Below, in pieces: positions 7 to 31,200 of a DNA stretch of 64,000 nt (positions are counted from its first letter, which is position 1; each line of letters opens with the position of its first letter). The stretch is from IMG/VR virus record IMGVR_UViG_3300042922_000643, positions 62,001-126,000 of that record, one strand, 5' to 3'. Under the pieces are notes generated by a model, which searched no databases, was not told the origin of the DNA, and saw only the letters and a program-made list of their open reading frames with translations. Position numbers and translations under genes: made by a program.

Positions 7-198
7 TTAAACATAGTAATCATCGTCCCTCAGATAAAGTAATGGGTAGGACTCTGCGGGTTCATGTTCTTTACTTTCGCAAATCGGACATTCTGGATCA
101 ATCTCATAAGACTCAATATAATACTCATGCCCACAGGATATGCAAGCTACCCATATGTCTGTCGTTACTCTCTTTTTGAATCTCTTTCGTGTTGTCAT
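7..198 (-). CDS. Small zinc-ribbon protein
   Basis: CISC...CPIC motif pair; start overlaps the PhoH stop codon. Confidence 0.7.
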   Translation of the reverse strand: MTTRKRFKKRVTTDIWVACISCGHEYYIESYEIDPECPICESKEHEPAESYPLLYLRDDDYYV

Positions 199-1532
199 TG
201 CAATTTTTCCACTCCCAGTTGAGCCAGTTTGGAGCGGACCACTGTTTCCAATGTGATGTGACCAACGATATCTTCACCTTTGAATTTATCCACCGTGTAT
301 GTAAGACCATTGCTGCTTGGCGTTAGTCGATGATCATCGATCTGTTGTGAGCTAATGTCTCCCAGGAAGACTACCTTACTACCCTCAGCAGCACGAGTAA
401 TGATTGTCGCAGCTTCATGTGCTGTTAAGTTTTGTGCGTCATCCACAATGATGAACTGACCAGGAATACTTCTACCACGAAGATGAGCCAACGCTTCAAG
501 CTCTAGAAATTTATTGTCAATGAGTCTTTGAATCTTATCACTTGAAGCCATGAATTTATCATCTTTATCTTCTTCTTTTTCAAGAAGGTACTCTAGTGCG
601 TCAAAGGTGGAAGCCATCCATGGACTTAGCTTTTCAAGCTTATTCCCAGGTAGATAGCCAATATCTTTACCCACAGGAATCAGTGGCCGCATTACTACGA
701 CTCTATTATATATTCCGTCTTTTCCTAATACTTGTTCTAGCGCTGCTGCCAATGTAAGTAATGTCTTTCCTGATCCAGAAGGACCGATTGCTGAAACAAA
801 TTCAATACTTGGGTCAAGCAAGAGATGGAGCAAGAACTTTTGTTCTAGAACTTCATTGCCTTCTTTATCTTTTTTCGGCTTAATTCCCCACGCACGATAT
901 TCATGTTTCAATGCTTGGATACTATGTGTTCCCGAATCATAAATACCTTGATGAATACCACCCGCTGGATCTTTCATAATTACAAACTGATTATGTACTA
1001 ATCTACGAGTACCTACATCAAAGCCCTGGATCGGATATGAACTATAGAACTCTTTTAATTCTTCTTTTGTAATATCGATATGTCGTACACCTGAATAAAG
1101 TTTACTTACGTTTACATCTTCAGGAGCGAAGTTCTGAGTATCAATTTTCAGAGAGTCTGCAATAACTCGAACATTAATATCTTGGCTGATTAAGGCCGCA
1201 TCTTCATCTCGCGCTGCTTTAATGATTTGGTGATCGTTCTTCTTCAGATCAAGGTCTTCCGCCTTGACAAGGACCTGAACCCAATGGCCTTCGTATGGAA
1301 CACCCGCATCCAGCTGGCCTCTTGTACGAAGCTCATCCAAGAATCTTGTAGTTGCTCGGCAATGTTCATTGATAGGGTCGTGACCCTTCTTGAACTTGTC
1401 TAGCTCGTTTAAAACTACTAGAGGAATAATTACATGAGTGGGTTCACCAAAACTCTTCAGTACGTCATACAGTGGCCGATCTAAAAGCACATTGGTATCA
1501 ACCACGACGCGTTTCAATTGTTGCGCTGCCAA
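195..1532 (-). CDS. phoH: PIN-PhoH (PhoH2/YlaK-like) RNase-ATPase
   Basis: PIN motifs VVVDTNVLL and QDINVR; Walker A GPSGSGKT; IGYLPG, LRGRS and DDAQN motifs; TTG start with AAGGAGG RBS. Confidence 0.93.
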   Translation of the reverse strand: MAAQQLKRVVVDTNVLLDRPLYDVLKSFGEPTHVIIPLVVLNELDKFKKGHDPINEHCRATTRFLDELRTRGQLDAGVPYEGHWVQVLVKAEDLDLKKNDHQIIKAARDEDAALISQDINVRVIADSLKIDTQNFAPEDVNVSKLYSGVRHIDITKEELKEFYSSYPIQGFDVGTRRLVHNQFVIMKDPAGGIHQGIYDSGTHSIQALKHEYRAWGIKPKKDKEGNEVLEQKFLLHLLLDPSIEFVSAIGPSGSGKTLLTLAAALEQVLGKDGIYNRVVVMRPLIPVGKDIGYLPGNKLEKLSPWMASTFDALEYLLEKEEDKDDKFMASSDKIQRLIDNKFLELEALAHLRGRSIPGQFIIVDDAQNLTAHEAATIITRAAEGSKVVFLGDISSQQIDDHRLTPSSNGLTYTVDKFKGEDIVGHITLETVVRSKLAQLGVEKLQ

Positions 1533-13527: not shown

Positions 13528-13945
13528 CGGTAGATCCTCCTTTGTTCTTTGTCAGACTAAGGTATAGGTTCCCCAAGGTTTCAGCGAGTTTGTTATGACC
13601 AAGCTTAGCCGTATTCTTTGTTGCCGACACAATTTCAAGTCCCACCAGAGCGATGATCAAAGACAATCGTGCAGTATCAGGCAGTCCAGTCACTCCGTCA
13701 AAAGCATGAAACATGGCGATCCATAGCACATAGGTAAAAACTTTGCCCCAGAATTTCTTCATTAGGGATGGCAACTTAAACTGTCCTTCTTTTCTAGCGA
13801 CCTGTCCTTCAAAAATGAGATCAATAAACATGGCGATAAATAGATAGGAGAGCTGATGGTTGAGCGGACCAATTGCAAAGATAACTGCGCCTTTAAGAAA
13901 TAAAAGCGGCTCTTGTTCGAAGAAACTTCTGTTCAATAGTAACAC
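13487..13945 (-). CDS. Holin, phage holin family 4 (toxin secretion/lysis)
   Basis: LFIAMFIDLI...ARKEG...KVFTY...HAFD...EIVSATKNTAKLG pattern. Confidence 0.8.
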   Translation of the reverse strand: MLLLNRSFFEQEPLLFLKGAVIFAIGPLNHQLSYLFIAMFIDLIFEGQVARKEGQFKLPSLMKKFWGKVFTYVLWIAMFHAFDGVTGLPDTARLSLIIALVGLEIVSATKNTAKLGHNKLAETLGNLYLSLTKNKGGSTDEESANDEDPNQP

Positions 13946-13966: not shown

Positions 13967-15217
13967 CTACAAGTCGTCCAAATTTTTGTAAGTATAATCA
14001 ATCTTGATATTTCTGATCGTAGGTATAATATCGCCCTGTTTCTTCAGTATCGTTTTGACATAAATCTTCTGGATGGGCGCAAGGATCTCGTTACCGAAAT
14101 CGAATTCGTTTGTCATGGCCTTGTTATAGTAGAGTTTATGCTCAACCAAATCATCGATAGATGATTCTGCACCCTGAGCCGCACTCACTGTAGGCGTCTC
14201 TATTGTAAAGAACCGTTTCTTTGTTCCTTCAATAGAAAACTCAGTGACGAATTCTGCCACATCACTATTATAGACGCGGTACTCCAAACCGATATCTTGA
14301 AACCCATAAACGAAGTCTCTCTTCCCCTGATTATAAAACCAGTATGGCTGGGTGAAGAAAATCTGTATCTCTGTAACTTCGATTTTAGGAAACGAGAACA
14401 TCAGCTTACCAGCATCTTTAATCGGGATAGGTTTATCATTGTTGTTTTGATCTTTCTCTATGGGGAAATTAGGTAACCTATACCACGTATCACCGTAACC
14501 TTTATACTGAATATCTGCAATAGTCATTGAGTATTCTGGATAGGGATGAAGTGTCAAAATATTGGCAAATATGTTATTTAACATAGTCAAAGGTAGTTTG
14601 ACATGGATAATACCGTATACCTCGCTTACATTACTTTCTTCTGCAAAACTAGAGGTATGTGCCCAGAAGGTATTATTGCTGCGATCTACTGCGCGAAGAA
14701 GCTTGACGTCTTCAGGCTTGTAGTAAGTAGGTAGTCCTGTTGTTTGGTCAATAGCTTGTGTGTTGTTAGATTCAGAGAGCGTTACAGCTAATGAGCTTGG
14801 CAAAATAACTTGCCCATCATCAGTTGTATATGAAAGTTTAGATAGGCGATCACTATCAGGTAGAGTTGCAATACCATACAAGGTATCAATCGTTGCGCCT
14901 AGCGATCCATTATTGATAATACCATCAAGGGTATACATCGATTTAATCAGATGCTGCTTTTGAAGACTTTGCTCTTTATAAAGCAGATCTGTTTTAATCT
15001 TCTCTAGCTGAGTAGTTAATGCGTTGATCTTGTTCTGCAAGAAGAAGTTCTCACGTACCAAGATATCCATGTTCTCAGCGATCTCCTGATCATGCTCGTT
15101 TGCGATATTAAATAGCGTGACTAGGTCCTGATGAAGATCATTTTGAAGTCGATTAAACTCCCGAGAACTAGACGGCCCTTTATGTAGGTTAGGGTTATTC
15201 TGAGATATAGGTTGCAT
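13967..15217 (-). CDS. Virion structural (baseplate-like) protein, paralogous family member
   Basis: N-terminal GPSSSREFN..DL..LF coiled coil, jelly-roll-like core, FVYGFQDI strand, C-terminal IPTIRNI. Confidence 0.7.
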   Translation of the reverse strand: MQPISQNNPNLHKGPSSSREFNRLQNDLHQDLVTLFNIANEHDQEIAENMDILVRENFFLQNKINALTTQLEKIKTDLLYKEQSLQKQHLIKSMYTLDGIINNGSLGATIDTLYGIATLPDSDRLSKLSYTTDDGQVILPSSLAVTLSESNNTQAIDQTTGLPTYYKPEDVKLLRAVDRSNNTFWAHTSSFAEESNVSEVYGIIHVKLPLTMLNNIFANILTLHPYPEYSMTIADIQYKGYGDTWYRLPNFPIEKDQNNNDKPIPIKDAGKLMFSFPKIEVTEIQIFFTQPYWFYNQGKRDFVYGFQDIGLEYRVYNSDVAEFVTEFSIEGTKKRFFTIETPTVSAAQGAESSIDDLVEHKLYYNKAMTNEFDFGNEILAPIQKIYVKTILKKQGDIIPTIRNIKIDYTYKNLDDL

Positions 15218-16014: not shown

Positions 16015-18105
16015 TTAGCTGAAACGTAGTCGATAGCTTTTAAGTTTTGGTGAGGCAACAGTAATATCATCATCTCTTGTCAGCACAGCTTTGAAAAGAA
16101 TTTCATCTTTAACGGTGCCATCTATGTAGTTGTAATAGAATTCGTACTCTAGCCCTGGCGTAGCATGATTGAGAATGACATAGGTTGAAGTATTAGACTC
16201 TAGTAGTGAGTACTTTGTATAGTCCGTATTGATCGTATTATATCTTAGATCAAACAGTGACACTTTCATAAGGGCCTTTGCCTGAGAATATACATTTGAA
16301 CCATAGGACTTTGGATCAAAAGATATATCAACTGTTGAGCCATTTACGGTGTTTACACTTTCCCTGGTGTATACAAGGACGACAATTTCGTTCCATCCAT
16401 TTTGAAACAGATAGTTCAGTCGGTTTGTACTGTTTGGAATCCCTTGGAACAAAAGCTTGCCATTCATATAGATCGCAATAGGATCAGTACTTGCAGGCAC
16501 AGCTGTTACAAGTTCGCTAGTCTTTGTTGAAAAGACTCCTAACGTGAACATGTAATTCATGGCTGTGGTTGTGCGCTCTTTATTTAGAACGACACCTGGT
16601 TTTCCGTCAGCAATCTGGACATAATCAATATTGACCTGATTCTGTGGTGCAACCCAGTCGCTCATGCTCGGGAGATGGCTTGCATGTCCACTATGTTGAT
16701 ATTCGTAATGTTTCATACCCCAAGTATTCTTTCCTGCAAATAGCTGTTCTGTGCCATCAATAATCTTTCTATTTGCAACTTCACCGATCTTATAAAAGCG
16801 TATTCCATGTGCATACAAACTTTCCATTTCATATTCGCCAATAGAGATGCTGGTGTCAATAGAGAAGGTGTTCGGGATGGATGTCGAAATATTCTTGAAG
16901 TCGATGATCTGATCATACTTTGGAAGCTCTCGATTCACTGGGGATAGGTCTTTCCACTCAGGTTCTCCAGTCTCCACAGGCAGTGCAATGTAATATTTGA
17001 TATCCGTTCCATTGGGAAGCTCTTCATCAACTAACAATGAGACTTTATCTATGGTGAAGTTCTTTGTGGAGTCTGGTTCAGCATCCAGGACTTTAGAGTA
17101 AAAATCAGAACTTGTAGAATAGATAAAGGTATAAAAGCTAATATTTTTAATCCCCATCAAATAGGAGTACTTAGTTTGGCTGACTCCATTTACTTCTGTG
17201 ATAGTTTCATTATCTGGTTCGTTCTTTGCCATCAAGAAGCGGATTCTGCTTACCTCCAGCATCGGAAAATCAAAAGTATATTCACTATAGACTTCGATAG
17301 CCTCTTCGTAATAAGGCAGTGGAAACCAATTCAGTCCGTCTGAAGTACCCTCTACACGGATAAAGGTTGGTTTAATAGACTGAAGAGATAACGTAATACG
17401 ATTGATTTGCTGCTTCTTCTCAAACACAACATGAAAGTAAGATGGTACGGCAATGCTCTCTGTTGTCAGGATTGTTGTTTGCCAAGTCGTGTTAGACTTA
17501 TCACTTAAGGCATCTTGCGTTGTACCACTGATCGTTTTCACTTCTGGAGTTGGAGAAATTAGCGGCGAAATTTCAAACGCTGTATAAGCCGCAGGAACAA
17601 TCTTCTTACTGGTTTTCTTTACGTCATTAAGTCGTACTTCATGATTCGAGATGTCTACATTCGCAGTTGTCTTTGTCAGATCAATAGAACTCATGTCCGC
17701 AAAAATATCATACACGCTATTCAGATATCCCGAGTTTCCATAAAGCAATATCAGTTCCTTCAGTTGATTCTCCAAAGAAAGTAACTGGTAATCCAGCTTG
17801 TCTTTCTCAACATCAAACTTATTAAAGTGTTTCAGTGATTTGTTCTGTTGATCTACGGCATTTTCATATAGTGTTTCTAAGTCTTCATAGGCTCGATCCA
17901 GAACATTATTATAGTCACCAGAACGTGCTGTACTTTTTGCGCGTACATTTTTGAATTCTAAAGATGGACCACTGAGGTTAGTCTTCTCTAGATATTGATT
18001 TACCTTCCAGATGAATTCCTTGGAGGAAGGGAGGTTCCCCTTTTGGAGTTCCTCCCGTAAGATTTTGTTTACGGCTTTGGCAAAGCGTCTTTCTCTAATA
18101 CTCAA
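16015..18105 (-). CDS. Virion structural (baseplate-like) protein, paralogous family member
   Basis: Coiled coil, DALSD..NTTW jelly-roll start, YLMGIKNI strand, C-terminal SPKLKSYRL. Confidence 0.7.
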   Translation of the reverse strand: MSIRERRFAKAVNKILREELQKGNLPSSKEFIWKVNQYLEKTNLSGPSLEFKNVRAKSTARSGDYNNVLDRAYEDLETLYENAVDQQNKSLKHFNKFDVEKDKLDYQLLSLENQLKELILLYGNSGYLNSVYDIFADMSSIDLTKTTANVDISNHEVRLNDVKKTSKKIVPAAYTAFEISPLISPTPEVKTISGTTQDALSDKSNTTWQTTILTTESIAVPSYFHVVFEKKQQINRITLSLQSIKPTFIRVEGTSDGLNWFPLPYYEEAIEVYSEYTFDFPMLEVSRIRFLMAKNEPDNETITEVNGVSQTKYSYLMGIKNISFYTFIYSTSSDFYSKVLDAEPDSTKNFTIDKVSLLVDEELPNGTDIKYYIALPVETGEPEWKDLSPVNRELPKYDQIIDFKNISTSIPNTFSIDTSISIGEYEMESLYAHGIRFYKIGEVANRKIIDGTEQLFAGKNTWGMKHYEYQHSGHASHLPSMSDWVAPQNQVNIDYVQIADGKPGVVLNKERTTTAMNYMFTLGVFSTKTSELVTAVPASTDPIAIYMNGKLLFQGIPNSTNRLNYLFQNGWNEIVVLVYTRESVNTVNGSTVDISFDPKSYGSNVYSQAKALMKVSLFDLRYNTINTDYTKYSLLESNTSTYVILNHATPGLEYEFYYNYIDGTVKDEILFKAVLTRDDDITVASPKLKSYRLRFS

Positions 18106-18119
18106 GCCTGTCGCCTCCC

Positions 18120-19928
18120 TTATACGCTACCTTCTTTAAACACGATCCTGAGGCTGTAGTCTTCAAGAATAGGCGTAAAGGAAGGCGCATTTGTAATTGT
18201 CGTTGGACGTTGCAAAATGACTTTAAGTCGAACCGCTGTTGGCGCTGGAGTCACTGTTAGATATTCTTTGTAAAGCTGGAAGGAAGATTGAAGGTCCACA
18301 CTTGCTCCATTCAATTCTATAATCTTCGGAGGGAATGTTTTTCCGCTCATAGGCATCTGATGCATTGGAGAGATTTGAGTCCAGTTCACATCGTCAAAAG
18401 AGACATAGTACTGAATCCAATCATTAGCCTTTTTAAGATCTTGCAAGAAAGCTTCAGGGATCTTTTCATTCGCATATAGCATAACCTCTTTAATCGGTTT
18501 GTCTAGAGTAAACTTTTTCGTTATAAGCTCGCTCTTTTCTACAAATTGATAGCTCATAATATTAATATCTCGAATACCAATCGCATATCTCCAGCCGTCA
18601 AATACTTCAATTGCTTTACGAATGTATTCATTCTGGCCGATTAAATACTTCCCTGTTTCTCCACTAACAACACTTTCAGGAACTTTAGACTCTGGAACAC
18701 GAACAGAACTTTCCTTTTCAGCTCCAGTTGAAGAGTCGATAGTTGTTGTGATCCGTTCATAGTAGGTATGTCCAAAGAGTTCTTTGTAAGACTCTACTTG
18801 ATCGAACACAAACTCTACGTATTTAGCTCTACGTGTTCCGAAACTCCATACCCCTTGCCCTGCAAACTTAGAAGCATTGTAATCATTGCTACCATTAAAG
18901 ACTTCATCTTGACGATAGGTCTGTGGCGTTGTATTGATTTCAGCATTGATAATATAATCCCCGTCAGTATAAAGACCTTTATAATCAAAGCCATCTTCAG
19001 AAGTTCGTATGCTATAGACGATCACCTTACCTGTAGACCCTGTAGGATGATAAGGATTAATGTTTATCCAGTTGATGTCTGCAATTTCTTTCAGTTCGAC
19101 AATGAGCCGTAAACGAAGCCTGTCATTGCTTTCCGTTCCTTTAACCCAATCAAAGTCATAGTTCATAGCAACGTCTACAATCTTAGACTCATCAACATTC
19201 ACCATCTGATATTCAAAGATTGTGTCTGGTCTGCCATCTAATACAACCGAAGCGTCATTATTCGGTGTCTGTTTAAAAATGTAGCTCGCGGCTGCACCTG
19301 TCTGGTCTCCAGTACTTGCTCTCTTAACGATGTGTTGGGTACCCGATTCTCCATCACCTTGCAAGAGCTTGATAGAGGCATCCACGCTTCTGTTCACCGT
19401 ATTAGAACGTCCCAGAGTGACGATACCTTCTCTAGTAGAAATCTGAGCGAGGGCACCCATGACCATAGCAGGCTCTATACCATTCTGGTCAACAAAGCTA
19501 TCTTTGATATAAGTAGAGTCGTCTGTTGTTTCATTAGCAATCAGATTTAGATCATTAGTGAGACCCGTCAAACCATGGATTCGGTTCTCAATCCGCAGAC
19601 GCTCGCTCTGTGCATAATTGAAATGATTAACCAGAGTATCGCCGATACGTTCAATTTCTCCAAAAAGAATTGTTGTATCTGCTACAATTTCATCAATCGT
19701 TTGAGAGTAGTCCTCAATGAAAGGAAGATGCCCTTCGTCCATATACCGCTTAATTGTCAATGGCCGACCAAGATTAACATAGTATCTACGGATTGTTTCT
19801 TGGACTAAGATGGCAACCTGCTCTTTCGTGAAAGCATTACCCATTTGACTTGCCATTCTGGTGAACAAGTATGCAGCTTGCATCTCGATGATCCTAGAAT
19901 TGATATTAGTATTAAACTTGTTACTCAT
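18120..19928 (-). CDS. Virion structural (baseplate-like) protein, paralogous family member
   Basis: Coiled coil, VLDGRPDTIFE, YAIGIRDI strand, C-terminal TPILEDYSL. Confidence 0.7.
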   Translation of the reverse strand: MSNKFNTNINSRIIEMQAAYLFTRMASQMGNAFTKEQVAILVQETIRRYYVNLGRPLTIKRYMDEGHLPFIEDYSQTIDEIVADTTILFGEIERIGDTLVNHFNYAQSERLRIENRIHGLTGLTNDLNLIANETTDDSTYIKDSFVDQNGIEPAMVMGALAQISTREGIVTLGRSNTVNRSVDASIKLLQGDGESGTQHIVKRASTGDQTGAAASYIFKQTPNNDASVVLDGRPDTIFEYQMVNVDESKIVDVAMNYDFDWVKGTESNDRLRLRLIVELKEIADINWININPYHPTGSTGKVIVYSIRTSEDGFDYKGLYTDGDYIINAEINTTPQTYRQDEVFNGSNDYNASKFAGQGVWSFGTRRAKYVEFVFDQVESYKELFGHTYYERITTTIDSSTGAEKESSVRVPESKVPESVVSGETGKYLIGQNEYIRKAIEVFDGWRYAIGIRDINIMSYQFVEKSELITKKFTLDKPIKEVMLYANEKIPEAFLQDLKKANDWIQYYVSFDDVNWTQISPMHQMPMSGKTFPPKIIELNGASVDLQSSFQLYKEYLTVTPAPTAVRLKVILQRPTTITNAPSFTPILEDYSLRIVFKEGSV

Positions 19929-19938
19929 ATGTCACCAC

Positions 19939-21783
19939 CTACTTCATCACTTTGAATTTAAGAGCATATTGTAAAACGGTAGGAGAAACAGAGCTAGCTG
20001 CGACCCCGTTACGACGGAGAATAATTTTCATTCGGAAATTAGAAGCCAAGTATTCATACTCTACCGCAATCTCTGCGTTACCATGATTAGTATCTTGGTT
20101 CGTTAAGATATCTGATTTGTTAAATGTTTCAGAGAAGTAGAGCTTATTACCTTCATTCCAGTATTCAAACATTGCATACTGGCTACTTGGTGTCTTACTA
20201 TCCAAAACATAAGGGGCGGGTGACTTCCAAGTTTTCGTTTTATAATCAGTAATGTTTAAAGTATTAACACTCCCATCAACCCCAGTGTACGGAAGGACCT
20301 GAGTTAGCGTAGCCCTATTAGGACCTGCAATAGATGCATTTTGTAGAGTTACGGAGATTGGTCGATACCCCGAAGTATTGGGATTGAAGGTTGTGACTCC
20401 ATTAATAACCTCATAATCAATGTAAGGGTATTTGGAAAGGACTACAGTCTTATTATGATTTGCTCCGTCTTTGAAAACATCCTTCTGTTTGAGACGAGTC
20501 AAACCTTTGCTGTATATATCTACCGTCCATGGATCATCAATCTCCCGATTAGGCGTGTAACTAATGGTATAGATGGAACTAGTAGAACGTTCTTTTGTAA
20601 GTTGCACACTAGTTGCGCCATTGACAAATGCCCAATCATAGAATGGGATACCGTCTTTATAAACCTTTGCTTCAGGATCGCTATAAGTTAAAGCTGGAAA
20701 GCGAAGAGTCGCTGTACGAGCACTATCAAAAATAAGCAACTCGCAAGGGATCATTGTTTGACCTTCAGGAAGAATCGGGTACCAATCTTCTTGTGTAGGA
20801 GTGTTCGCATAAGAGATATAATACTCAATCGAAGTTTGTCGGGAAGTCGCCTCGCCAGAAATCGAATTGAAGTAAGGGTGATCTTCTGTGGCATTCAGAG
20901 ATACCTGCATAACGTTACCATCGATCTGCATTGGCTTGCTTACATAAATGGAGGATGGTAAGTATTCATTACCTCTAATCTGCAAGTCTTTGATGCCATA
21001 GACATACTCATACTTGGTAATCTCTTTCTGTGCTTCCTTCGTGAACTGAGGCTCATCTCTTAAGGTGGGGGGAGCTTGCAACGGCGCTGATGGCGCTTCA
21101 GGCTGAGGAGGTGTATAAGGAGTAGAATGATAAGAGTAGGACACGTTGGCGCTTGTAGTGCCTGTGACATACCCCCATATCGAGTTGGTTTCCATACCTC
21201 CACTGTTTTCCCCAGCGAAGTACCAGCTATTTGGATTCACGTACCAGTCGGCAACATTTTGACCGTTACCGTTTGTGGTATTTAGTTTGTTTCCATTAGC
21301 GTCATACATGTCCTTGCCGATTTGTGTATCAACAAGGCCATCGTTATCCCAATCGAGATTCGCTGGTGGTCGGTAAGTGTAAGACCCTGTATTCAATTCA
21401 TTTGGACTGTAGTTGACAGCTTGATCCAAAGTGTTTGTGTAAGCTGTATACGTAGTCACACCAACCTGAGCGGCCTGAGCACGAGCAGCTTCTGCTGTAG
21501 CATGTGCGGCGGCCATAGCTGCTCTATCTCCACGCTCGTATGCATCTTGGTAGGCTTGCTTTGCTGCTACAACTGTGTCATTAATTTGCTGCGCTGTCTG
21601 CCAGTTAGTCGCAGATGAACTTGATGTTGTAGAACCATTTGTTGTTTGAGTTGTGCTGCTGGACGTGGTGCTTACCACTGTACCAACCACCGTTCCTACC
21701 ACAGTACCAGTTACTGTAGCTGTGACGGTAGGAGTGTAGACGCCGTTCACCGTAGTGCCGACAACATATCCTATAGTAGCCAT
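19939..21783 (-). CDS. Structural protein: low-complexity N-terminus plus C-terminal half of the baseplate-like family
   Basis: T/V/G-rich N-terminus and Pro-rich linker, then YVYGIKDL...VSLNATE...IEYYIS...SPTVLQYAL. Confidence 0.7.
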   Translation of the reverse strand: MATIGYVVGTTVNGVYTPTVTATVTGTVVGTVVGTVVSTTSSSTTQTTNGSTTSSSSATNWQTAQQINDTVVAAKQAYQDAYERGDRAAMAAAHATAEAARAQAAQVGVTTYTAYTNTLDQAVNYSPNELNTGSYTYRPPANLDWDNDGLVDTQIGKDMYDANGNKLNTTNGNGQNVADWYVNPNSWYFAGENSGGMETNSIWGYVTGTTSANVSYSYHSTPYTPPQPEAPSAPLQAPPTLRDEPQFTKEAQKEITKYEYVYGIKDLQIRGNEYLPSSIYVSKPMQIDGNVMQVSLNATEDHPYFNSISGEATSRQTSIEYYISYANTPTQEDWYPILPEGQTMIPCELLIFDSARTATLRFPALTYSDPEAKVYKDGIPFYDWAFVNGATSVQLTKERSTSSIYTISYTPNREIDDPWTVDIYSKGLTRLKQKDVFKDGANHNKTVVLSKYPYIDYEVINGVTTFNPNTSGYRPISVTLQNASIAGPNRATLTQVLPYTGVDGSVNTLNITDYKTKTWKSPAPYVLDSKTPSSQYAMFEYWNEGNKLYFSETFNKSDILTNQDTNHGNAEIAVEYEYLASNFRMKIILRRNGVAASSVSPTVLQYALKFKVMK

Positions 21784-21793
21784 TAATCCACCT

Positions 21794-23146
21794 CTATTCT
21801 AAAGCATTTTTAACTGCGGTATAGTAAGCTCCATAACGATTGTATGAGCTATTGTACTGGCTCACTAGAGACTGATAGGCGCTGTATGCGGTTTGATACC
21901 GAACAACATCTGTTTCGTACACAGCCTTCGCTGCATTATAATTCTGTAGATCTATTACGTATTGAGCGTAGTCGGATTCATATTTGGTTAGTTCATCTTG
22001 ATAGATATCCCAACCACTATAAGTATCAACATCTGTTTGAGAAACGGTTACATTAGATGTTGTTGCTAGGGTAACTTCGGTCTCACGTTTACTGATCTTA
22101 TCCCAAAGGTCGGATTTTGAAATTTCTTTTTCACGAACCAGATATGTATTCTTGGTATAGTTCTTTTGTCGAATAACGAATGTAAATCGTTTTGCAATAA
22201 TACTTGGAAACTGGAATACCATTGTTTGGACTGATTCCTTTGGTTCAGTCACTAGACCTTTAATAGGATGATATGTTTCTACGTCTTCTTCATATCCAAT
22301 GGACACAATCTCCATAGGGTAAGTTGTGAAAGGTGTAATTGAAATTTCGCTTACGATTTCAGGTCTTAGTAGAGTCATCGTAAATTTCACTAGAGCTCCA
22401 CCAGCTTCTACGTCTCCCATTCCAACATTCAAAGGTTCATCTGTGAGAACAATTTCTCCCCAATACGAATCTTTAGAGTCATCAATAGCATTAGCCACAG
22501 GGTAAGAACTTTGAGTCTCAGGCATACCGCGCTGATCGGTGCGTAAGAAAGTAGCTACAGCACGACCACTACTATCATGAACTCTGTCGTTATCAGCGGT
22601 TTTAGATAGACATAAGTAGCTCTTATCATTATTCTTTTGAATTGTAGCTGTCGGAATCTCACTACCGTCTCTATCTTTAAAGAGATAAGGGTACTGAGCC
22701 CGATCTGTTTCCATGTCTGTTGTATTTGTGAAATCGAAGCTCTTTACAATCAGGCCGTCTTCACCTTCTGCGACAAGTCTAAGGCTGCTGATTCGTTCTC
22801 TCAAAGCTTTGACTTCGCTGTCTAGTGAAGATAGTGTTCCATCATATAGACGCTCATAGCTACTAAGAGCTCGTTCTACAAGGTCCGCTTCTGCGAACAT
22901 AACGCCCAGATCCATTTGGAAATTACCAAAGAATTGATTATAGAATCTAGAACTTACTCTCTCACCTTGCTGAACAAACTCTGTTTGCTGTTCATGGTCT
23001 TCAGCAATACGCCGAATAATTTCAGTGAATTCACTTTCGCTAATGGACTCCCCAGTAGTTCCGCCATTTGTTTTAATGATCTCTTGAATCTTATTTCGTT
23101 GCACCTGTGGAAGAATATCTAAGTATCCTTCGAGGTAATTCTTCAT
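21794..23146 (-). CDS. Structural protein: N-terminal half of the baseplate-like family plus Tyr-rich coiled coil
   Basis: Coiled coil, NAIDDSKDSYW, FTFVIRQKNY, then a Y-heptad coiled-coil tail. Confidence 0.7.
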   Translation of the reverse strand: MKNYLEGYLDILPQVQRNKIQEIIKTNGGTTGESISESEFTEIIRRIAEDHEQQTEFVQQGERVSSRFYNQFFGNFQMDLGVMFAEADLVERALSSYERLYDGTLSSLDSEVKALRERISSLRLVAEGEDGLIVKSFDFTNTTDMETDRAQYPYLFKDRDGSEIPTATIQKNNDKSYLCLSKTADNDRVHDSSGRAVATFLRTDQRGMPETQSSYPVANAIDDSKDSYWGEIVLTDEPLNVGMGDVEAGGALVKFTMTLLRPEIVSEISITPFTTYPMEIVSIGYEEDVETYHPIKGLVTEPKESVQTMVFQFPSIIAKRFTFVIRQKNYTKNTYLVREKEISKSDLWDKISKRETEVTLATTSNVTVSQTDVDTYSGWDIYQDELTKYESDYAQYVIDLQNYNAAKAVYETDVVRYQTAYSAYQSLVSQYNSSYNRYGAYYTAVKNALE

Positions 23147-24262: not shown

Positions 24263-25297
24263 CTATGTAGCGTACATATCGTTTCCTACAGGAATGACTA
24301 GCTTTCTACTGATGCGCACACTCTTGTCTCCATACACACCAAGAAGTGGAAGGTATGCTTGAGAGCTATCTCCCCAGTAAGTTGATGCTTCAAAGATCGT
24401 ACTTGCATTACCTCCCCACCTAGTAGCGACAATCATTCCATGATGTCCTGCACCATCATTATTATTCTCTATATAAGCAGCTGTAGTACCTGTACTGACA
24501 CCACCAGGTCTTGGCATAGCATTAGTACCTAATAAAGATGTAAGTCTTCCAATAGGACCAGAAGTTCCCGCCGACATACTTCCATCCGTAGCAATTGTGC
24601 CATACCCCGCATAGATACTCTTACCGTTATAGGTACGCATCCACGTGCTATCTGTCATTTGCCATCCACCACCGTGAGTTTGATGGTAAAAAACTTCAGA
24701 TCCATTTACTCGAAACGATCCTGTGATAAGATTTAGTCCAGAAGTATCTAGGGTAAAATATGTCGCCGTACCATTATGACTTTCAAATGTCATTGCAGGA
24801 GCACCAACATATAGACGGTTTGATCCTGCCAAGAGGTGCATATTACCATTGGCATCGGAAGGACGAAGCCAGCTTGTTCCTGAAGCATTTTGAATCCCAA
24901 CGTTCTTGTTGTTAGGCATTACAATAGTTCCTGCGTCCATACTAATATTGCCTTCTTTAGTGACAGCTAGCACACTTCCACCAAGTCCATTACCGACGAC
25001 AAATGTTGGAACTGTAGTTGCGCCTGGGTTTCCGCTATTCCAGTTGATATAGACACCATGGCCTGTTCCTGCATCTAAGTGAAGGTTACCATTACTAGTA
25101 AAGACATTCGCTGTTGTGGTATTAGCTATTGGAGAGTCACCCCCAACTATGAGGGTGCCTCCATAAGCAGTATTTGGTCCAAACTTCATTCGCTTACTGG
25201 CAGTAAAATTGATGTTACCCATCATGTAAATCTCGGGCATCCCTGTATGCATAATAGGATACCCTGCAATTGTAGATCCGCCTTCTAGTAAAGCCAT
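24263..25297 (-). CDS. Tail fibre protein
   Basis: Gly/Asn/Thr-rich; NGNLHLDA motif; HGGGWQMTDSTWMRTYNGKSIY (PilV/fibre-type motif); ends in LVIPVG. Confidence 0.8.
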   Translation of the reverse strand: MALLEGGSTIAGYPIMHTGMPEIYMMGNINFTASKRMKFGPNTAYGGTLIVGGDSPIANTTTANVFTSNGNLHLDAGTGHGVYINWNSGNPGATTVPTFVVGNGLGGSVLAVTKEGNISMDAGTIVMPNNKNVGIQNASGTSWLRPSDANGNMHLLAGSNRLYVGAPAMTFESHNGTATYFTLDTSGLNLITGSFRVNGSEVFYHQTHGGGWQMTDSTWMRTYNGKSIYAGYGTIATDGSMSAGTSGPIGRLTSLLGTNAMPRPGGVSTGTTAAYIENNNDGAGHHGMIVATRWGGNASTIFEASTYWGDSSQAYLPLLGVYGDKSVRISRKLVIPVGNDMYAT

Positions 25298-25298
25298 A

Positions 25299-28200
25299 CT
25301 ACAGCACCTGCCCTTCTATAATATTCCCTAGTACTTTCGTTTGTCCACTCTTATCGAATCTCATTTTCGTGTCCCACATTGCATTTAGATCTGCGGTAGA
25401 GATTAGTCTCGGAGCAATAAACAAATTCTTGCAATAGGAATCCCAGCAATCTTCATCCCACGAGTATCCACCTACTCTTACGATACCATTAAGACCAGCC
25501 ATTGTTTGCCCAGTGCAATTGGAAGTATAAATTGCTCCACTGGCTCCATAGATTTCCGCGGTCATCACATCTGTTGTGGAGTTATACTTTAAGACATACA
25601 AAGCCCAATCCTTATAATCTTGTTCAGATAGTGCAGAGCCACTACCATATTTGCTGACATAAGTCGTAGCAGTATTGCTATATCCTACAAGTTGCCAGCT
25701 AGCTACAGTTGCAGTAGCTCCCCACTTAAACCCAATACAAGCATCTGACTGACCAAGTACGTAGTAGTCTCCGACTGCAATCGGAACAAATCGGTTTCCT
25801 GTCGTCGTTGTCATACTCCAAATATTAGGCTTCGCGATTACCCCTACGGTCCAATCATTATTTGCATTTATGATGGAAGGAACTGTGTACTTTAAGATAC
25901 TATCTCCAACAGTTGTGTTTGGTGGAATCGATGGATTCTGATAAGGGAGATTTGTGGAGTTCGTCCATTGTACCCCATTAATATAGAGTTCACCAGCATT
26001 TGCAGAGTACCCCCATGAGGGTCCATCCACAAGCAGAGCTCCAGTATAAGCTTCTGATGCCTTGGATGTTCTCCAGAAGTAATGCCATTGCCCGTCAGCA
26101 ATGATAGAAGCATCTCCAGCAATCGTAGTAAAGATTGCGCGTGTCCAGTCAGAGGTGTAGAGACCAGCCGCAGTAAAAGCAGTGACTCCAGCAGCAGCAG
26201 ATGTCTTATACCATCCTGATACAGTTACATAGCTATCTGCTGTTACGGTGAAGAGTGTTCCATATGGTCCTTCCCATCCATGCCACTGGCTTGCCGAACC
26301 TGTCTTGGTGAATTTCCACGTCTTGGAATTTGGAATAGGCCCTGGCTCTGTTAGAGTGACATCAGTAATAATGCCACCATTATTCGTCCAAGGAGCTACA
26401 TCATAAAATAGATTCTTAAAAGAAGCTCCAATGAATACTCCGTTCTGATCATAGATAGTATTTGTTTCAGTGGTTGGCGGATTCAGATGGTTAATATCTA
26501 GAGAATCTACAGTAAGTGGATAGAACAAATCTCCACCTTGTAAACCCATAGGGCCTTCTACAATCCCTTTTGTGATAAGATCTCCGCTAGCCTTCAGTGA
26601 GCTCTTTGGTTTTGCAAGTGCAGAAATCTCTTCCGTATTTAGATTCCTATTGTAAACCGCTAGATTACTAATGGGTCTGTTGGCAGGAGAGCTATTTGTA
26701 CTTGTATCGTAGAACTTCATTCCGCCTACACGGGTTGTTGGCGTTGTTGCGCCCTCGCGGTTGATGAGGAATAAGAGTCTTACGTATCTTGTGCCATATC
26801 GGAACAAGCTTCCTGATCCACCGCCTACACCTGTTATAGTTCCCGTGTACTGCGTCCAGCTCGTTGGCACGGTTACGTTACCTGCGGCGATGTAGTTATA
26901 TCCGCCGCCGTCAGTAGAACAAGCCACCGCTGTTCCAACAGGAAGTGTTGTTCCCGTCCAAGCACTTGCGAGTGTGATCGTTTTTGCTGTGGTATTCAGG
27001 GTAACATAACCTACTGTTCCATCTGAGTATGTATAGTTCTGGTAGTTTCCTGTGATCCACCAAGAGAATTGCTTCGAGTAATGATAGACTCCAGCGGTTC
27101 CTGCCGCCCATCCCGTTGTGCTTGTTAGATACACTACGGTATCTCCTGGCTTCAATGCTTGAGCTAATGTGGTAAGACCCGCGTGAGTGACTCGGTTGTG
27201 CGGAATAACCGCTTTGTTCTTATCAAAGCAGATTACTCCATAGTAGAGTTTACTGGTTGCGGCCATTCCTTTGAACCATCCCGTTAGAGTATAGGGTCTA
27301 GTTGGGTCTACGGGAATATACTCATCAGAATATACCGTAGAGTCTGCACTTGTTCTAGATAAGCAACCTGCTTGCCCATCTGGACTATCTCCAGCTACAT
27401 ATACAAAGGAACTGAAGTTGGTATTATCACCTAAGTTAGCTGATCCATTCTTAATCAGGTTATTATTTACGCCATTTCCTACTCGCATATATTCAATGTT
27501 TGTGGCGTCAATCACAGGAACAGCGACCCCACCATAGCTTCCAGGCATCATAACCCCATCTATCCATAGCTCAAGACGAGTGGGCATAGAGATGACTACG
27601 AAGTGATGAACGCCATCGGTCTGAACAGGAGCAGACACTTCTTTGTAATTCGTAAGACCAGTACCTGAGCGTAGACGGAATGTGCCATCACCCAGCTGGT
27701 GAAGAGATAGAACATTCAAATCCATTGATCCATTATCGAATGAAAAGAGGGCCTGCTCAGATCCTGTAACCGTACGAGAATCTACTTCATAGTCAAGGGA
27801 TATACTAATCGGAGCCGTTGGTTTAAATGGTATCGAAGTGACACTTGCGGTAGGATATGATCGACTACCTATCACATAGGAAGTAGAGAATTGTCTCGGT
27901 TCCATTTGCGGTGCGCACAACCACATCCGCTTGCCTGACGGAATACTAATTACAAAGTCTAGTGAGTCCGTGTCATTGTTAACCTCTGTTCTTACGAAGT
28001 TAAAGACGCATCTCTTCCATCCTTCTTCAGGGTCAACTTGGATTTGGTTTGTCCACTTACCATGGTTCTCTCCAGCAGCAGCAGTAAGTCCTTGGATCTG
28101 TCCAGGAGCTTCTGTCTTCACATAAACTGAGATTGTGTAATCTGTTACGTCAGCCTGAGGAGAGTAATCACCGTAAGAGTAATACCATCCGCTACCACCA

Positions 28201-31200
28201 CTTGGTCCAGTAATACTTACAACAGGTGAGTCGATTCCGTCTGGAGGTGCAATATCATTCCATGTAATATTTAGAAAGTTATCTTTTGTCCAGCCTGTGT
28301 CAAGGTTCGTATTCGTCACGACATTTGTTGTGGCTTCTTCTACTAGCAGACCTTTACTGGATACACTCGCTCCTGATCCTAGAGTCGCAGGCGCAGACTG
28401 TCTAATCTTAAAGTTCCGTAGGTACCCCTTAAAGGCATTATATCCGCCCCAAGCTGGGACGTTTGCATAGTAGTCATTGGCAAGATTACTAACCTGAGAT
28501 ACGTTCGATGTGTATGCTCCGTCAGCTCCAATGAATAATCCCGTACTCCATCGATTTACGATATCTCTCTGACGATATGTTACCCAGTCTCCATTACCAG
28601 GAGTTGTTTCTAAACTGACGTCTGCTAAGGCTGGAGTTGTTGCACTTAAAGCTCCATTAACATAAAGTCTCAGATATTGTTTATCATACGTCAGTCGAAC
28701 AGTATTCCATGTGCCTGCGGTAACGAGCGCAGAGCTTGTTGCTGAAATACCCCATCCATTATTATGATACTCTGCTGGTTCTTTAGCCGCGGCACCGACT
28801 GTGCCTATAAGGGCTCCAGTACTTGAGAGGCGTAGATTAAAGATGTATCTTGAAGCATAATTGTATCCTGAGTAAAAGCTAGCCAATGCATAGTTACCCA
28901 GAATGTCTGCTTTAAACTCAATCTCTACATCTAAGAACTTTGTCTTATCAAAGACTAGAGCTACAGGTAGTCCTCCTGTTTGTGTTCTCAAGTAGCAAGT
29001 ATTATTACCGTTAAAATAACAACCCTCGTTAGAGAATATTGGTGCATCGACTGGTAAGAAGAATTCACCATAGTCTTTTAGATAATTCTCAGTGAGAGTA
29101 GCTGTTGTAGAAACATACCCGTCAGTAGTACCATCAAAAGGATAATAAACAACAGGAGTATTTACTTTTGGACCCCGCTCATTGACCTCCCCCGTGATAT
29201 TAAGACTATTCTTCTTTAGTCTGCCAAGGACACCAGTCACTTTGATAGTATACTCTGAACCGTACACAGTTCCTGCTCCGTTTGTAGCATAGGCTCTAAT
29301 ATAATATGTAGTTCCAGAGGCTAAGTTTTTGATGTTCGATTTAAATATTCCCGTCCCTGTACGAGCACCTAATGATGAATATGTGCCAAGGGCAATAGTC
29401 GGAGCAGTAGCAGTACCCCATACATGGCCATGCTGTGTCACGCCGCCGCCTGTTGCGGTGAGACTCCCACTAATAGATATAGTATTGCCACGGGTTACAG
29501 GAGTTGATGTTGTGACTGTAGCACTAGAGTACGAAGTCGTTGCACTAGCATTAGCTGAGTTTGGACTCTGAAGCAAAGTAGTTGTAGTAGGCAGATAGGC
29601 ATAGGCAGTATATGCAGTGTTTGGCGATAGCCCTGTCCACGCGCTTCCCGTTGTCTTGGTTTGCCCATTACATACGATCATTGATCCCGCTGTAGATGAC
29701 CACACGACAGAAGAGGAAGTGATACTTGAAGATGTTGGCGTACTTGGCGCTGCCTGAGCAGCCTTAGCTGTGGTAAAGCTCAATTCAGGTCCATAGGATG
29801 TTCCGTATTGAGTCGTTGCGTAAGACCTAAAATAGTAAGTCGTCACAGGAGAAAGCCCTGTTGCTGAACTACTATATGCGATAGGGCCCGCCATAGCCCC
29901 TAGCGATGTCTTTGTGGTTAAGGCAACGGTAGGGGCTGTAGAGGTGGACCACACATGTCCGTACTGACTGACAGTGCCTCCATCAAAAGTCGTGACTGCC
30001 CCTGTAAGGGTCGAGGTACTAGCAGTTATGCTATTAGCTACGCCTGTCGTTAGCGTTGCAAGACCACTTTGAATTGTATAATACGTATCTAGTGGGCCGT
30101 TAACATTACCCGCATTATCATAAGATCTCCACTGGAAATGATATTTGCCAAATCCGTTCGTTCTATTGAAGGTATATGTATACTGATTACTGCTCCCAGG
30201 AGTTGTTACGTTCTCGGCCGACCAAGCTCCATAGGTCGATCCATTATCCGTACTCTTTCTCCACCAAGCTGATACTCTATTAATACCAGAACCTGCATCT
30301 GTAGAGGTGGCCGTTAAAGCTGCTGTACCTGTATTAGAAGTAGGACTAGTGGTAATGACATCGTTTGGTTTAGTTAAGCTCGGTACTGTTTTATCGTGGT
30401 AACAATAAGCTCGCTGCATAGTACTAACATTTCCTGCGTAGTCATAGGCACGGAAGTCTATGCCCCAGTTGCCCTCTTGTTCTGCTGCTGGGAATGTGTA
30501 AGTCACTGTGAACTGACCTGGTGCTACAGAGCTAGCATTTTGAATCGGATAGTATGTTGCATCAGGCCGTACCATATACACACTTACATATGATATGCCA
30601 ATTGCGTCAGTAACATTCAGTGCAGCAGCGGTAAATGTACCTCCTGTACTTTTATATTGCTGTGGAGAAACAGACCCAATGACTGGAGCTGTTGTATCTA
30701 CACCAAAGTAGTTATTTGAATAGTTAACATCCCCTGTTCCTGTAGACACGGAGTTGACTTGTCCAAAGTCATCCATAACCTGCATACGAACATAATATGT
30801 ACTGCCATTGGTCAGGATACCTGAAGGTAGCGTAAAGCTTCTAGCAGAGCTATCGTATACCCAACCTGTACCATAAAGGACTGCGCTATATGCAGAGTTA
30901 GCAATCTCTAGATTATACGCTGCTTGATATCCAGCGGCATCAGGGTCGCTAAAACTCCAAGTGAATGTAGGTGTTGTTGTTGGTATCCACGTGTTATTTG
31001 CTGGATAAGTAATTGCTGGAGGACTAGGAGCTGTATTGCTTCGTAATACGATGTAGTCTAGGTCGATGGTGACACCACCAGCTTCACCGACGTCGAACCG
31101 CCAGCCTGTAATATTGCCATAGGCAGAGTTCCACCGTACATGGTCACTCATATGAACTACAGTTGTAACCCAGCCACCTGTCCCTGTTAGCCAGTCGCTA

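What the first reader, a model, noticed from the sequence alone, without database searches (positions are those of the whole stretch)
19939..23146. One baseplate-family paralogue is split into two genes inside a jelly-roll domain, with new sequence on both cut ends
Seen: the 602-aa and 696-aa proteins each run coiled coil, jelly-roll start, an F-x-F-x-x-Q-type strand, a Y-x-x-G-I-(K/R)-(D/N)-I strand, V-x-L-x-x-x-E, I-x-Y-Y-(I/V) and a terminal P-x-L-x-x-Y-x-L. The 416-aa protein shares the coiled coil, both strands and a similar C-terminus. The 450-aa gene has only the first half (to FTFVIRQKNY) and ends in a Tyr-heptad coiled coil. The next gene (614 aa, own RBS, 10 nt away) has about 250 aa of unrelated T/V/G-rich, helical and Pro-rich sequence, then resumes at YVYGIKDL and carries the remaining motifs. 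Inference: the domain is completed in trans by strand donation, freeing two new termini on the virion. Recoding or splicing into one chain is the alternative.
Basis: partly seen in the sequence, partly recalled or inferred. Interest (0 to 1): 0.72.

Follow-up and report, generated by a model that had tools for sequence, protein, structure and literature searches.

The report
Phage tail protein gene split inside a domain
In this 251-kb soil jumbo phage, a tail or baseplate protein that related phages make as one chain is encoded by two adjacent genes cut inside a sugar-binding-type beta-sandwich, and modelling indicates the two products refold into the original unit with a new tail on each cut end.

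Summary
The 450-aa gene (21794-23146, minus strand) and the 614-aa gene (19939-21783, minus strand) match complementary parts of one 761-position phage family profile, PHROG 20243: positions 3-455 and 423-758. Bacillus phage 0305phi8-36 (gp171, 755 aa), Moorella phage MTATph1 and 38 further database clusters have this protein as a single chain.

In a model of the single-chain form, complete CBM32 / F5-8 type C domains align to residues 182-432. A floppy 65-residue excursion sits between the last two strands, and the window's cut lies in that excursion. So the 450-aa protein keeps strands 1-7, and the 614-aa protein carries strand 8 (YEYVYGIKDL) after about 256 new residues.

The split is real and old:
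- Three soil metagenomes give the same junction with no indels.
- At least 15 diverged relatives have the same stop, ribosome-binding site and ATG arrangement.
- Their reading-frame offsets differ (0, 1 or 2), which excludes recoding. No intein features were found.

The two-chain complex is predicted with ipSAE 0.73 against 0.00 in controls, while the 450-aa protein alone folds poorly. Relatives (KLEB27-3, Edson) cut the same domain a second time.

Verdict: an ancient gene fission within a domain, completed in trans. This is supported by computation only, and the function of the new ends is unknown.

The parts
21794..23146 (-). N-piece gene (450 aa). It is the orthologue of residues 1 to about 410 of single-chain 0305phi8-36 gp171.
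   Evidence: Matches PHROG 20243 positions 3-455. BLASTP to gp171 covers residues 77-433. Seventeen homologue clusters of 406-459 aa have the same architecture.
22784..22951 (-). Long N-terminal helix (residues 66-121), the presumed coiled coil shared with the paralogues.
   Evidence: DSSP on the AF2 models gives H66-121 in the 450-aa protein and H66-129 in the fused form.
22124..22609 (-). Strands 1-7 of the CBM32 / F5-8 type C-like beta-sandwich (about residues 180-341). Strand 7 is FTFVIRQ, followed by a short hairpin strand.
   Evidence: Weak Pfam PF00754 hit over residues 212-335, covering HMM positions 9-122 of 127. Structural alignment of the fused model to CBM32 domains.
21995..22117 (-). 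Conserved part of the loop excursion (residues 344-384: DLWDKISKRE ... SGWDIY). Fused orthologues have it too.
   Evidence: The alignment to gp171 continues through this stretch. W348, K350, R354, E355, G378 and W379-Y382 are invariant in A2. The corresponding region has low pLDDT in the fused model.
21797..21994 (-). New C-terminal tail of the N-piece (residues 385-450): an amphipathic helix with a Tyr/Trp stripe at 7/4/3 spacing.
   Evidence: Composition is 19.7% Tyr, with the spacing shown. The helix 378-438 has pLDDT 70-83. The Tyr-bearing face is in the predicted interface. Length and sequence vary among relatives.
21784..21796 (-). Junction: TAG stop (21794-21796), a GAGGTGG ribosome-binding site overlapping it, and a 10-nt gap before the ATG at 21781-21783. 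The downstream gene is in the +1 frame.
   Evidence: Sequence. Frame and upstream stops. The junction is unchanged in contigs of three metagenome runs.
21016..21783 (-). New N-terminal extension of the C-piece (residues 1-256). It runs T/V/G/S-rich (1-60), Ala-rich helix (61-110), N/T/Y/G-rich with a DWDNDGLVD loop (111-222), then Pro-rich (223-256).
   Evidence: No counterpart in gp171. Hypervariable among relatives, at 91-191 aa. A co-occurring strain shows 25 of 30 substitutions at third codon positions. Only residues 223-256 are in the predicted interface.
20968..21015 (-). Donated strand 8 of the CBM32-like sandwich (residues 257-272, KYEYVYGIKDLQIRGN).
   Evidence: Aligns to gp171 417-432, which is the last strand in the CBM32 superpositions. 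E259, Y260 and G263 are invariant in A3. All of 249-283 is in the interface.
19939..20967 (-). C-terminal beta-rich domains of the C-piece (residues 273-614, plus the stop codon). The last strands (584-614) pack on residues 129-189 of the N-piece in the model.
   Evidence: BLASTP to gp171 433-755. Matches PHROG 20243 up to position 758. Interface list.
18120..19928 (-). Unsplit paralogue (602 aa; gp172-like).
   Evidence: PHROG 21108. Synteny with gp172. Structural paralogy of gp172 to gp171 in BFVD, E 3e-21.
16015..18105 (-). Unsplit paralogue (696 aa; gp173-like). Its strands 7 and 8 are only about 18 residues apart.
   Evidence: hhalign of A1 against the 696-aa protein is colinear, 34-499 to 27-392, E 1e-4, and the excursion is absent.
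13967..15217 (-). Unsplit shorter paralogue (416 aa; gp175-like) with a canonical strand 7, short loop, strand 8 (EIQIFFTQPYWFYNQGKRDFVYGFQDIGL).
   Evidence: hhalign of A1 against the 416-aa protein gives E 5.5e-5. BFVD match to gp175 has E 3e-14. Sequence.

Best explanation
**What it is.** The 450-aa and 614-aa genes are the two halves of an orthologue of Bacillus phage 0305phi8-36 virion protein gp171. An ancient gene fission separated them.

**Where the cut lies.** It is in a long, flexible excursion that this lineage carries in the loop between strands 7 and 8 of a CBM32 / F5-8 type C-like beta-sandwich.

**How it is expressed.** The halves are translated as separate polypeptides from adjacent cistrons. 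The gap is 10 nt and the ribosome-binding site overlaps the stop codon. That this arrangement gives roughly matched amounts is inferred.

**How it reassembles (modelled, not shown).**
- Residues 257-272 of the 614-aa protein insert as the missing eighth strand of the sandwich in the 450-aa protein.
- The C-terminal strands of the 614-aa protein pack on residues 129-189 of the 450-aa protein.
- The Tyr-striped tail helix of the 450-aa protein lies against the Pro-rich segment 223-256 of the 614-aa protein.
- The heterodimer then takes the place of single-chain gp171 in the distal tail or baseplate, next to its three unsplit paralogues.

**What the fission leaves behind.** It leaves a free N-terminal extension (residues 1-222) that is lineage-variable yet under purifying selection. 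I infer it to be a display or docking module for host-surface or fibre contact. That last step is the least supported.
For: **Orthology and split**
- The two genes match complementary halves of PHROG 20243 and of gp171.
- Synteny is conserved with gp172, gp173 and gp175.

**The split is derived and old**
- On a tree of the C-terminal part, all 40 split forms fall in one clade (100/96). The fused forms lie outside it.
- The paralogues are unsplit.

**The cut is inside a domain**
- Whole CBM32 domains align to fused-model residues 182..432, across the pLDDT<50 excursion 347-411.
- The 696- and 416-aa paralogues have strands 7 and 8 adjacent.
- The weak Pfam F5/8C match in the 450-aa protein stops at HMM position 122 of 127.

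**The products are separate**
- Seven relatives have their own stop, ribosome-binding site and ATG, with gaps of 2-17 nt and frame offsets of 0, 1 or 2. Some have a second stop.
- Other genes sit between pieces in Edson (14.5 kb) and in L010.

**The sequence is real**
- Contigs from three runs, samples and studies span the junction with no indel, at depth 94-452.

**Association**
- ipSAE is 0.73, 0.73 and 0.77 against 0.00 in three controls. That mark was reached by 58 of 80 solved complexes and 2 of 110 mismatched pairs.
- There are 464-467 contacts, and the interface includes 614:249-283 and 584-614.
- The 450-aa protein alone gives pLDDT 57.9 and pTM 0.26, against 78.2 and 0.66 for the fused form.

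**The extension is functional coding sequence**
- A strain variant has 30 substitutions. Of these, 25 are at third codon positions and only 5 change an amino acid, all conservatively.
Against: - Everything about association rests on structure prediction. A predictor given two halves of a family that also exists as one chain will tend to rebuild the one-chain arrangement, so the score is not independent of the homology.
- My own shallow alignments (17 and 39 rows) were used, so the calibration counts hold only roughly.
- The alone-versus-fused pLDDT comparison is confounded by alignment depth (17 rows against 33).
- The central strands of the 450-aa protein alone (251-327) are still modelled at pLDDT 70-86.
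- There is no expression, proteomic or structural data for this phage, which is known only from metagenomes.
- No function could be assigned to the N-terminal extension. Only sub-threshold motif hits were found.
Confidence: 0.72

Rival explanations
1. The two products no longer complete each other. Each folds and works on its own, and the 450-aa sandwich tolerates the loss of strand 8 or fills the gap with its own hairpin strand (residues 333-341).
For: The 450-aa protein alone keeps its central strands 251-327 at pLDDT 70-86. A cis hairpin strand follows strand 7. Pieces can be encoded kilobases apart in Edson.
Against: The same hairpin strand is present in the fused form alongside strand 8, so it is not a substitute. 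The strand-8 motif is invariant in all C-pieces (E259, Y260, G263). The complex is predicted with 0.73 against 0.00 in controls and about 465 contacts. The outer strands of the N-piece are below pLDDT 50 when it is modelled alone. The two pieces are adjacent in every two-piece relative whose gene context I inspected: L005-L009 and L011.
Confidence: 0.12
2. Recoding (a +1 frameshift or stop read-through) or RNA splicing joins the two ORFs into one chain.
For: The gap is only 10 nt, and the downstream frame is open for 5 codons before the ATG.
Against: A fusion would have to shift within about 5 nt, and no slippery motif is shared. Relatives have frame offsets of 0, 1 and 2, gaps of 2-17 nt, and in L009 and KLEB27-3 a second stop directly before the ATG. 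Each junction has a strong ribosome-binding site and an ATG. L010 has a 185-aa gene between the halves.
Confidence: 0.03
3. The halves are joined after translation by a split intein (a 'fractured gene' arrangement).
For: Extra sequence sits on both cut ends, and in one relative a free-standing gene lies between the halves. This superficially resembles the arrangement described in PMC2677866.
Against: No Hint or intein Pfam hit appears in either protein or in the extension. There is no Cys near the junction and no HN[CST] motif. Some N-pieces end a few residues after the conserved helix (for example ...QWG), leaving no room for an N-intein. The extensions are not homologous across the clade.
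Confidence: 0.02
4. The stop at 21794-21796 is an assembly error or a recent inactivating mutation, making this a pseudogene.
For: None was found.
Against: Three independent metagenome assemblies agree with no indels at high depth. The same architecture is found in relatives only 50-65% identical. The new N-terminal extension is under purifying selection.
Confidence: 0.01

Closest known systems
Bacillus phage 0305phi8-36 gp171 (ORF171, 755 aa; PHROG 20243) and its paralogues gp172, gp173 and gp175
   Same: It is the orthologous protein, in the same position in the distal tail or baseplate module just upstream of the lysis genes, with the same set of paralogues. gp171 was identified in virions by mass spectrometry, according to the record's own note.
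   Different: gp171 is one chain. Here the gene is cut at about gp171 residue 410, with 66 new residues on the upstream end and about 256 on the downstream end. Identity is only 26-29%.
Bacillus phages vB_BauM_KLEB27-3 (gp053, gp054, gp055) and Edson / vB_BceM_WH1
   Same: They have the same cut between strands 7 and 8, each with its own ribosome-binding site. Their C-pieces are 43-52% identical to the window's.
   Different: They carry a second cut at residue 243/246 of the 450-aa protein, also inside the sandwich, with a homologous extension of about 145 aa on the middle piece. In Edson, pieces 1 and 2 are 14.5 kb apart.
CBM32 / F5-8 type C (galactose-binding domain-like) modules, for example Clostridium perfringens GH89 CBM32-6 (4a42)
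   Same: The fold is the same: Z 13.9, with 124 of 127 residues superposed on the fused model. There is a weak PF00754 hit.
   Different: The Pfam score is below the gathering threshold. A 65-residue excursion (here cut) lies between the last two strands. Sugar binding was not tested.
Donor-strand complementation in chaperone-usher pilus subunits (from my own knowledge of the field)
   Same: A beta-sandwich that lacks its last strand is completed by a strand supplied by another polypeptide.
   Different: The fold here is CBM32-like, not Ig-like. The donor strand is internal to the partner, not an N-terminal extension. The pairing is a fixed heterodimer descended from one chain, not a polymerising fibre.
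Gene fissions in phage genomes, such as the T4 topoisomerase large subunit split into gp39 and gp60 and split DNA polymerase genes in some T4-like phages (own knowledge); 'fractured genes' with split inteins (PMC2677866)
   Same: One ancestral gene is encoded as two cistrons whose products must reassociate.
   Different: This is a structural protein. The cut lies inside a small beta-sandwich rather than between domains. There is no intein and no homing endonuclease at the window's junction.

Membership tests
PHROG 20243 / 0305phi8-36 gp171 orthologue group | Significant sequence match along the whole family profile | tested here: met
   The 450-aa protein matches positions 3-455 (E 2e-47) and 614:250-611 matches positions 423-758 (E 4e-43). 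Together they cover the profile.
PHROG 20243 / 0305phi8-36 gp171 orthologue group | Conserved gene neighbourhood (small genes upstream; gp172-, gp173- and gp175-like paralogues and lysis genes downstream) | tested here: met
   Gene order in the window compared with 0305phi8-36, KLEB27-3 and metagenomic relatives.
PHROG 20243 / 0305phi8-36 gp171 orthologue group | Single polypeptide of about 730-770 aa | tested here: not met
   There are two ORFs separated by a stop and a frame change. The split is confirmed in three metagenomes.
CBM32 / F5-8 type C domain (PF00754) | Eight-stranded galactose-binding-like beta-sandwich fold | tested here: met
   The fused-orthologue model aligns with complete CBM32/F5-8C structures at Z 12-14 and rmsd 2.2-2.8 A over model range 182..432. 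This was tested on the orthologue's model, not on the window proteins' own structure.
CBM32 / F5-8 type C domain (PF00754) | Pfam score at or above the gathering threshold | tested here: not met
   17.8 bits against a cut-off of 28.2, E 0.0037, for residues 212-335.
CBM32 / F5-8 type C domain (PF00754) | Carbohydrate binding at the apical loops | not testable with these tools
   This needs binding assays or a liganded structure.
Split-intein 'fractured gene' | Hint-domain halves on the cut ends, with nucleophilic Cys/Ser/Thr and a terminal HN motif | tested here: not met
   No intein family hit. No HN[CST] motif, and the single Cys in each protein is far from the junction. Some relatives have tails too short for an N-intein.
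Programmed frameshift / read-through gene | Conserved frame relation and recoding site across relatives | tested here: not met
   Frame offsets are 0, 1 and 2 and gaps are 2-17 nt. Second stops occur in L009 and KLEB27-3.
Donor-strand complementation (works-like comparison only) | An incomplete sandwich in one chain is completed by a strand from another chain | tested here: inconclusive
   This is supported by prediction only: ipSAE 0.73 against 0.00 in controls, with 614:249-283 in the interface, and a low-confidence fold for the 450-aa protein alone. No pairwise contacts or experimental structure are available.

The most novel reading that the evidence does not exclude
In this jumbo-phage lineage one small CBM32-like sandwich is built from two polypeptides, and in KLEB27-3 and Edson from three. 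The loop cuts have become stable 'ports'. Each downstream piece grows a lineage-specific N-terminal module, and whole genes, including adhesin-like genes of more than 2000 aa, can be inserted between the pieces. Intradomain fission would then be a general way for the phage to bolt new host-recognition parts onto a conserved baseplate-periphery scaffold, held together by obligatory strand complementation.
Probability: 0.3. Interest if true: 0.65.

Novelty: new variant of a known kind. Interest (0 to 1): 0.5.

Why it matters
- If the modelled assembly is right, this is a natural and evolutionarily stable case of a single small beta-sandwich assembled from separately encoded chains. Single-chain orthologues are available as a built-in control.
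- It would show that phage tail proteins can be cut inside a domain, not only between domains, without losing the fold.
- It would also show that the cut sites can take on new sequence and even whole genes.
- This bears on how jumbo phages diversify the host-facing end of the tail, and on annotation, because the pieces look like unrelated 'hypothetical proteins'.
- It could inform protein engineering: natural split points and a possible Tyr-helix / Pro-rich clasp for split-protein designs.
- It is not a new principle. Gene fission and strand complementation are both well known.

Tried and rejected
- **Near-identical DNA in phage records:** none found.
- **PHROGs on upstream neighbours:** no hits, so the place of the gp171 family in the baseplate could not be pinned down.
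- **Protein Atlas search with the N-terminal extension:** best score 0.64, uninformative.
- **Exhaustive phmmer search with residues 55-225 of the extension against 1.84 billion representatives:** four hits only. One is an orthologue. The other three share only short motifs that are repeats in those proteins: an AKxDYxxAxKxGDxxAM helix repeat, the FG-GAP loop VDWDNDGLMD, and YDANGNKL. No function follows from these.
- **Pfam on the extension at E up to 5:** only sub-threshold hints (Choline_bind_3 E 0.017, Excalibur E 0.44).
- **Re-fusion origin of the two-piece form:** the free tree places Edson (three-piece) basal, which would suggest the window's two-piece form arose by re-fusion. The AU test does not reject monophyly of the non-two-piece lineages (p 0.207), so no re-fusion claim is made.
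- **phi812 baseplate chains in Foldseek:** TM-scores are about 0.1, and the paper describes CBM16/61-like tripod domains, not this family. This is not used as evidence of homology.
- **Literature:** no paper on KLEB27-3 is in the library.
- **Fold search with the 450-aa-alone model:** not run, because its confidence is too low to give meaningful matches.
Full report
**Setting**

The window lies in an IMG/VR virus record of 251,543 bp that CheckV rates 100% complete. The sequence is found in soil metagenomes from three studies. The genes of interest are all on the minus strand, in this order: a 2055-aa Ig/LamG-domain giant, four small genes, the 450-aa gene, the 614-aa gene, the 602-, 696-, 256- and 416-aa genes, then a holin-like gene and an amidase/endolysin. 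The nearest isolated relatives are Bacillus jumbo myophages 0305phi8-36, vB_BauM_KLEB27-3, Edson and WH1, and Moorella phage MTATph1.

**The observation**

- The junction reads ...GAA TAG aggtggatta ATG. A GAGGTGG ribosome-binding site overlaps the stop codon.
- The downstream ORF is in the +1 frame, and a stop in that frame lies five codons before the ATG.
- One family profile, PHROG 20243 (761 positions), is matched by the 450-aa protein at positions 3-455 and by residues 250-611 of the 614-aa protein at positions 423-758.
- BLASTP to single-chain 0305phi8-36 gp171 (755 aa) places the 450-aa protein on residues 77-433 and 614:254-614 on residues 414-755.
- The first 256 or so residues of the 614-aa protein and the last 66 or so of the 450-aa protein have no counterpart in gp171.
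- The 450-aa tail is 19.7% Tyr, with aromatic residues spaced 7/4/3.

**Is the cut inside a domain?**

- I modelled a fused orthologue from a 33-sequence alignment (pLDDT 78, pTM 0.66). It has a long helix (66-129), a beta region (132-346), a low-confidence excursion (347-411, pLDDT below 50), and then confident strands from residue 412.
- Complete solved CBM32 / F5-8 type C domains superpose on model range 182..432. Examples are 124 of 127 residues of 4a42_A (Z 13.9) and 129 of 132 residues of IFT25.
- So the sandwich is made of residues 182-346 plus the strand at about 417-432, and the excursion is an insertion in its last hairpin loop.
- Two sequence-level facts agree:
  - The 696-aa paralogue aligns colinearly with the fused family and lacks the excursion.
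  - The 416-aa paralogue has strand 7, a short loop and strand 8 in the canonical arrangement.
- The weak Pfam F5/8C hit in the 450-aa protein stops at HMM position 122 of 127, short of the last strand.
- The window's cut maps to the end of the excursion. The 450-aa protein therefore holds strands 1-7, and the 614-aa protein holds strand 8 (residues 257-272) plus all downstream domains.

**Is the split real, and are the products separate?**

- Contigs from three runs, samples and studies span the junction with no indels at word depths of 94-452. The only difference near it is one substitution at 21638.
- Homologue searches found 17 clusters of N-pieces (406-459 aa) and 38 clusters of C-pieces (448-552 aa), at 33-66% identity. 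None of them is fused.
- A separate clade of 38 clusters is fused (727-767 aa).
- On a tree of the shared C-terminal part, all split forms make one clade (100/96) and the fused forms lie outside it. The fission is therefore a single old event.
- Seven relatives each have a stop, a strong ribosome-binding site and an ATG at the junction. Gaps are 2-17 nt and frame offsets are 0, 1 and 2. In two of them a second stop lies directly before the ATG. No recoding mechanism can be conserved across these.
- There are no intein features.
- In one deep lineage an unrelated 185-aa gene lies between the halves.

**Do the halves reassemble?**

- The complex of 450:125-450 with the full 614-aa protein scored ipSAE 0.73, 0.73 and 0.77, against 0.00 for three controls. 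That mark was reached by 58 of 80 solved complexes and 2 of 110 mismatched pairs. Because I used my own alignments, those counts hold only roughly.
- There are about 465 contacts.
- On the 614-aa side the confident interface is 223-288 (the Pro-rich segment, strand 8 and what follows) and 584-614.
- On the 450-aa side it includes 129-139, 227-239, 263-276 and 325-340, plus one face of the tail helix (382, 389, 393, 396, 403, 410, 417, 421, 424, 431). That face is the Tyr stripe.
- Residues 1-222 of the 614-aa protein are not in confident contact.
- In the same job, the pLDDT of the 450-aa chain was 73-82 with its true partner and 57 with unrelated partners.
- Modelled alone by AlphaFold, the 450-aa protein reaches only pLDDT 57.9 and pTM 0.26, with the outer strands below 50.
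- Caveats:
  - Predictors tend to rebuild a known single-chain arrangement from its halves.
  - The alignments are shallow.
  - Residue pairs were not reported.
  - This is therefore support, not proof.

**The new ends**

- The N-terminal extension differs completely between sub-lineages in sequence and in length (91-191 aa).
- Even so, a co-occurring strain in one metagenome differs at 30 sites over residues 52-194. Of these, 25 are third codon positions and 5 are conservative replacements. The extension is therefore a functional coding region.
- Exhaustive searches gave only motif-level resemblances: a helix motif that is a tandem repeat in P0108, an FG-GAP-type DWDNDG loop, a YDANGNKL motif, and sub-threshold choline-binding and Excalibur hits.
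- I infer a display or docking role from three things: its variability, its freedom from the predicted interface, and the host-recognition character of the neighbouring genes. This is the weakest link in the explanation.

**Beyond the finding**

- KLEB27-3, Edson and WH1 cut the same domain a second time. Their piece 1 ends at residue 243 of the 450-aa protein, and piece 2 resumes at residue 246 after a new extension of about 145 aa that is homologous between KLEB27-3 and Edson.
- That second site lies in the loop corresponding to gp171 236-253, again inside the 182-432 sandwich.
- In Edson, pieces 1 and 2 are 14.5 kb apart, with two giant adhesin-like genes between them.
- Whether the window's two-piece form is ancestral or a re-fusion cannot be decided.

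**Comparison and verdict**

- The pair is a split orthologue of gp171 / PHROG 20243. Sequence and synteny criteria are met. The single-chain criterion is not.
- The fold is CBM32-like, though the Pfam score is below threshold.
- It works like donor-strand complementation and like other phage gene fissions, but it is a member of neither class in the strict sense.
- I found no description of this split in the searchable literature. The 2007 comparative paper notes only coiled coils in gp168-175 (PMC2147016).
- I rate it a new variant of a known kind, of moderate interest.

Noticed in passing
L001:9001-12474 (KLEB27-3 gp053-gp055); L003:8950-11330 and L003:25835-26578 (Edson): Relatives encode the same protein in three genes. 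The extra cut, at residue 243/246 of the 450-aa protein, is also inside the CBM32-like sandwich. The middle piece carries a new N-terminal extension of about 145 aa that is homologous between KLEB27-3 and Edson.
   Followed up: partly
L003:11463-25814 (Edson): Between piece 1 and piece 2 of the split gene lie 14.5 kb holding two giant genes. One is 2299 aa with an F5/8C hit; the other is 2208 aa with CBM_4_9, ILEI and Gp58-like hits. The cut site seems to accept whole host-recognition genes.
   Followed up: partly
L010:820-1377: In the deepest split lineage (P0069) an unrelated 185-aa gene with no Pfam hit sits between the N-piece and the C-piece. The N-piece there has a different, longer Tyr-rich tail.
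   Followed up: partly
window 21202-21628 and 22178-22466: One soil run (X3) holds a minor strain about 7% divergent in these stretches, at about a tenth of the main strain's depth. The changes in the first stretch are almost all synonymous.
   Followed up: partly
window 21118-21603 (614-aa residues 61-222): The extension is a mosaic of short motifs that occur as tandem repeats in other proteins: the AKxxYxxAxxxGDxxAMxxAH helix (P0108), the DWDNDGL loop of FG-GAP repeats (P0109), and YDANGNKL (P0110). There is also one sub-threshold choline-binding-like WYF..G..M unit.
   Followed up: partly
window 24263-25297 and 25299-31466: The 344-aa protein has a Shufflon_N (PilV-like) hit just above threshold. 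The 2055-aa protein has Ig-like and Laminin_G_3 domains. These are probably fibre or adhesin genes upstream of the split gene.
   Followed up: no
window 12111-13945: A lysis cassette lies directly downstream of the paralogue block: a holin-like gene (13487-13945) and an amidase/endolysin (12111-12947).
   Followed up: no
L011:4483-6000: A two-piece relative (P0045 lineage, on a 241-kb contig in an NCBI assembly) has a 505-aa N-piece with a still longer C-terminal tail, and its stop directly abuts the next start codon.
   Followed up: no
fused model mf48c0542881a against BFVD: The same multi-paralogue fold family appears in uncultured Caudovirales and in Acinetobacter jumbo phage vB_AbaM_ME3 (three proteins). 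The family therefore reaches beyond Firmicute phages.
   Followed up: no
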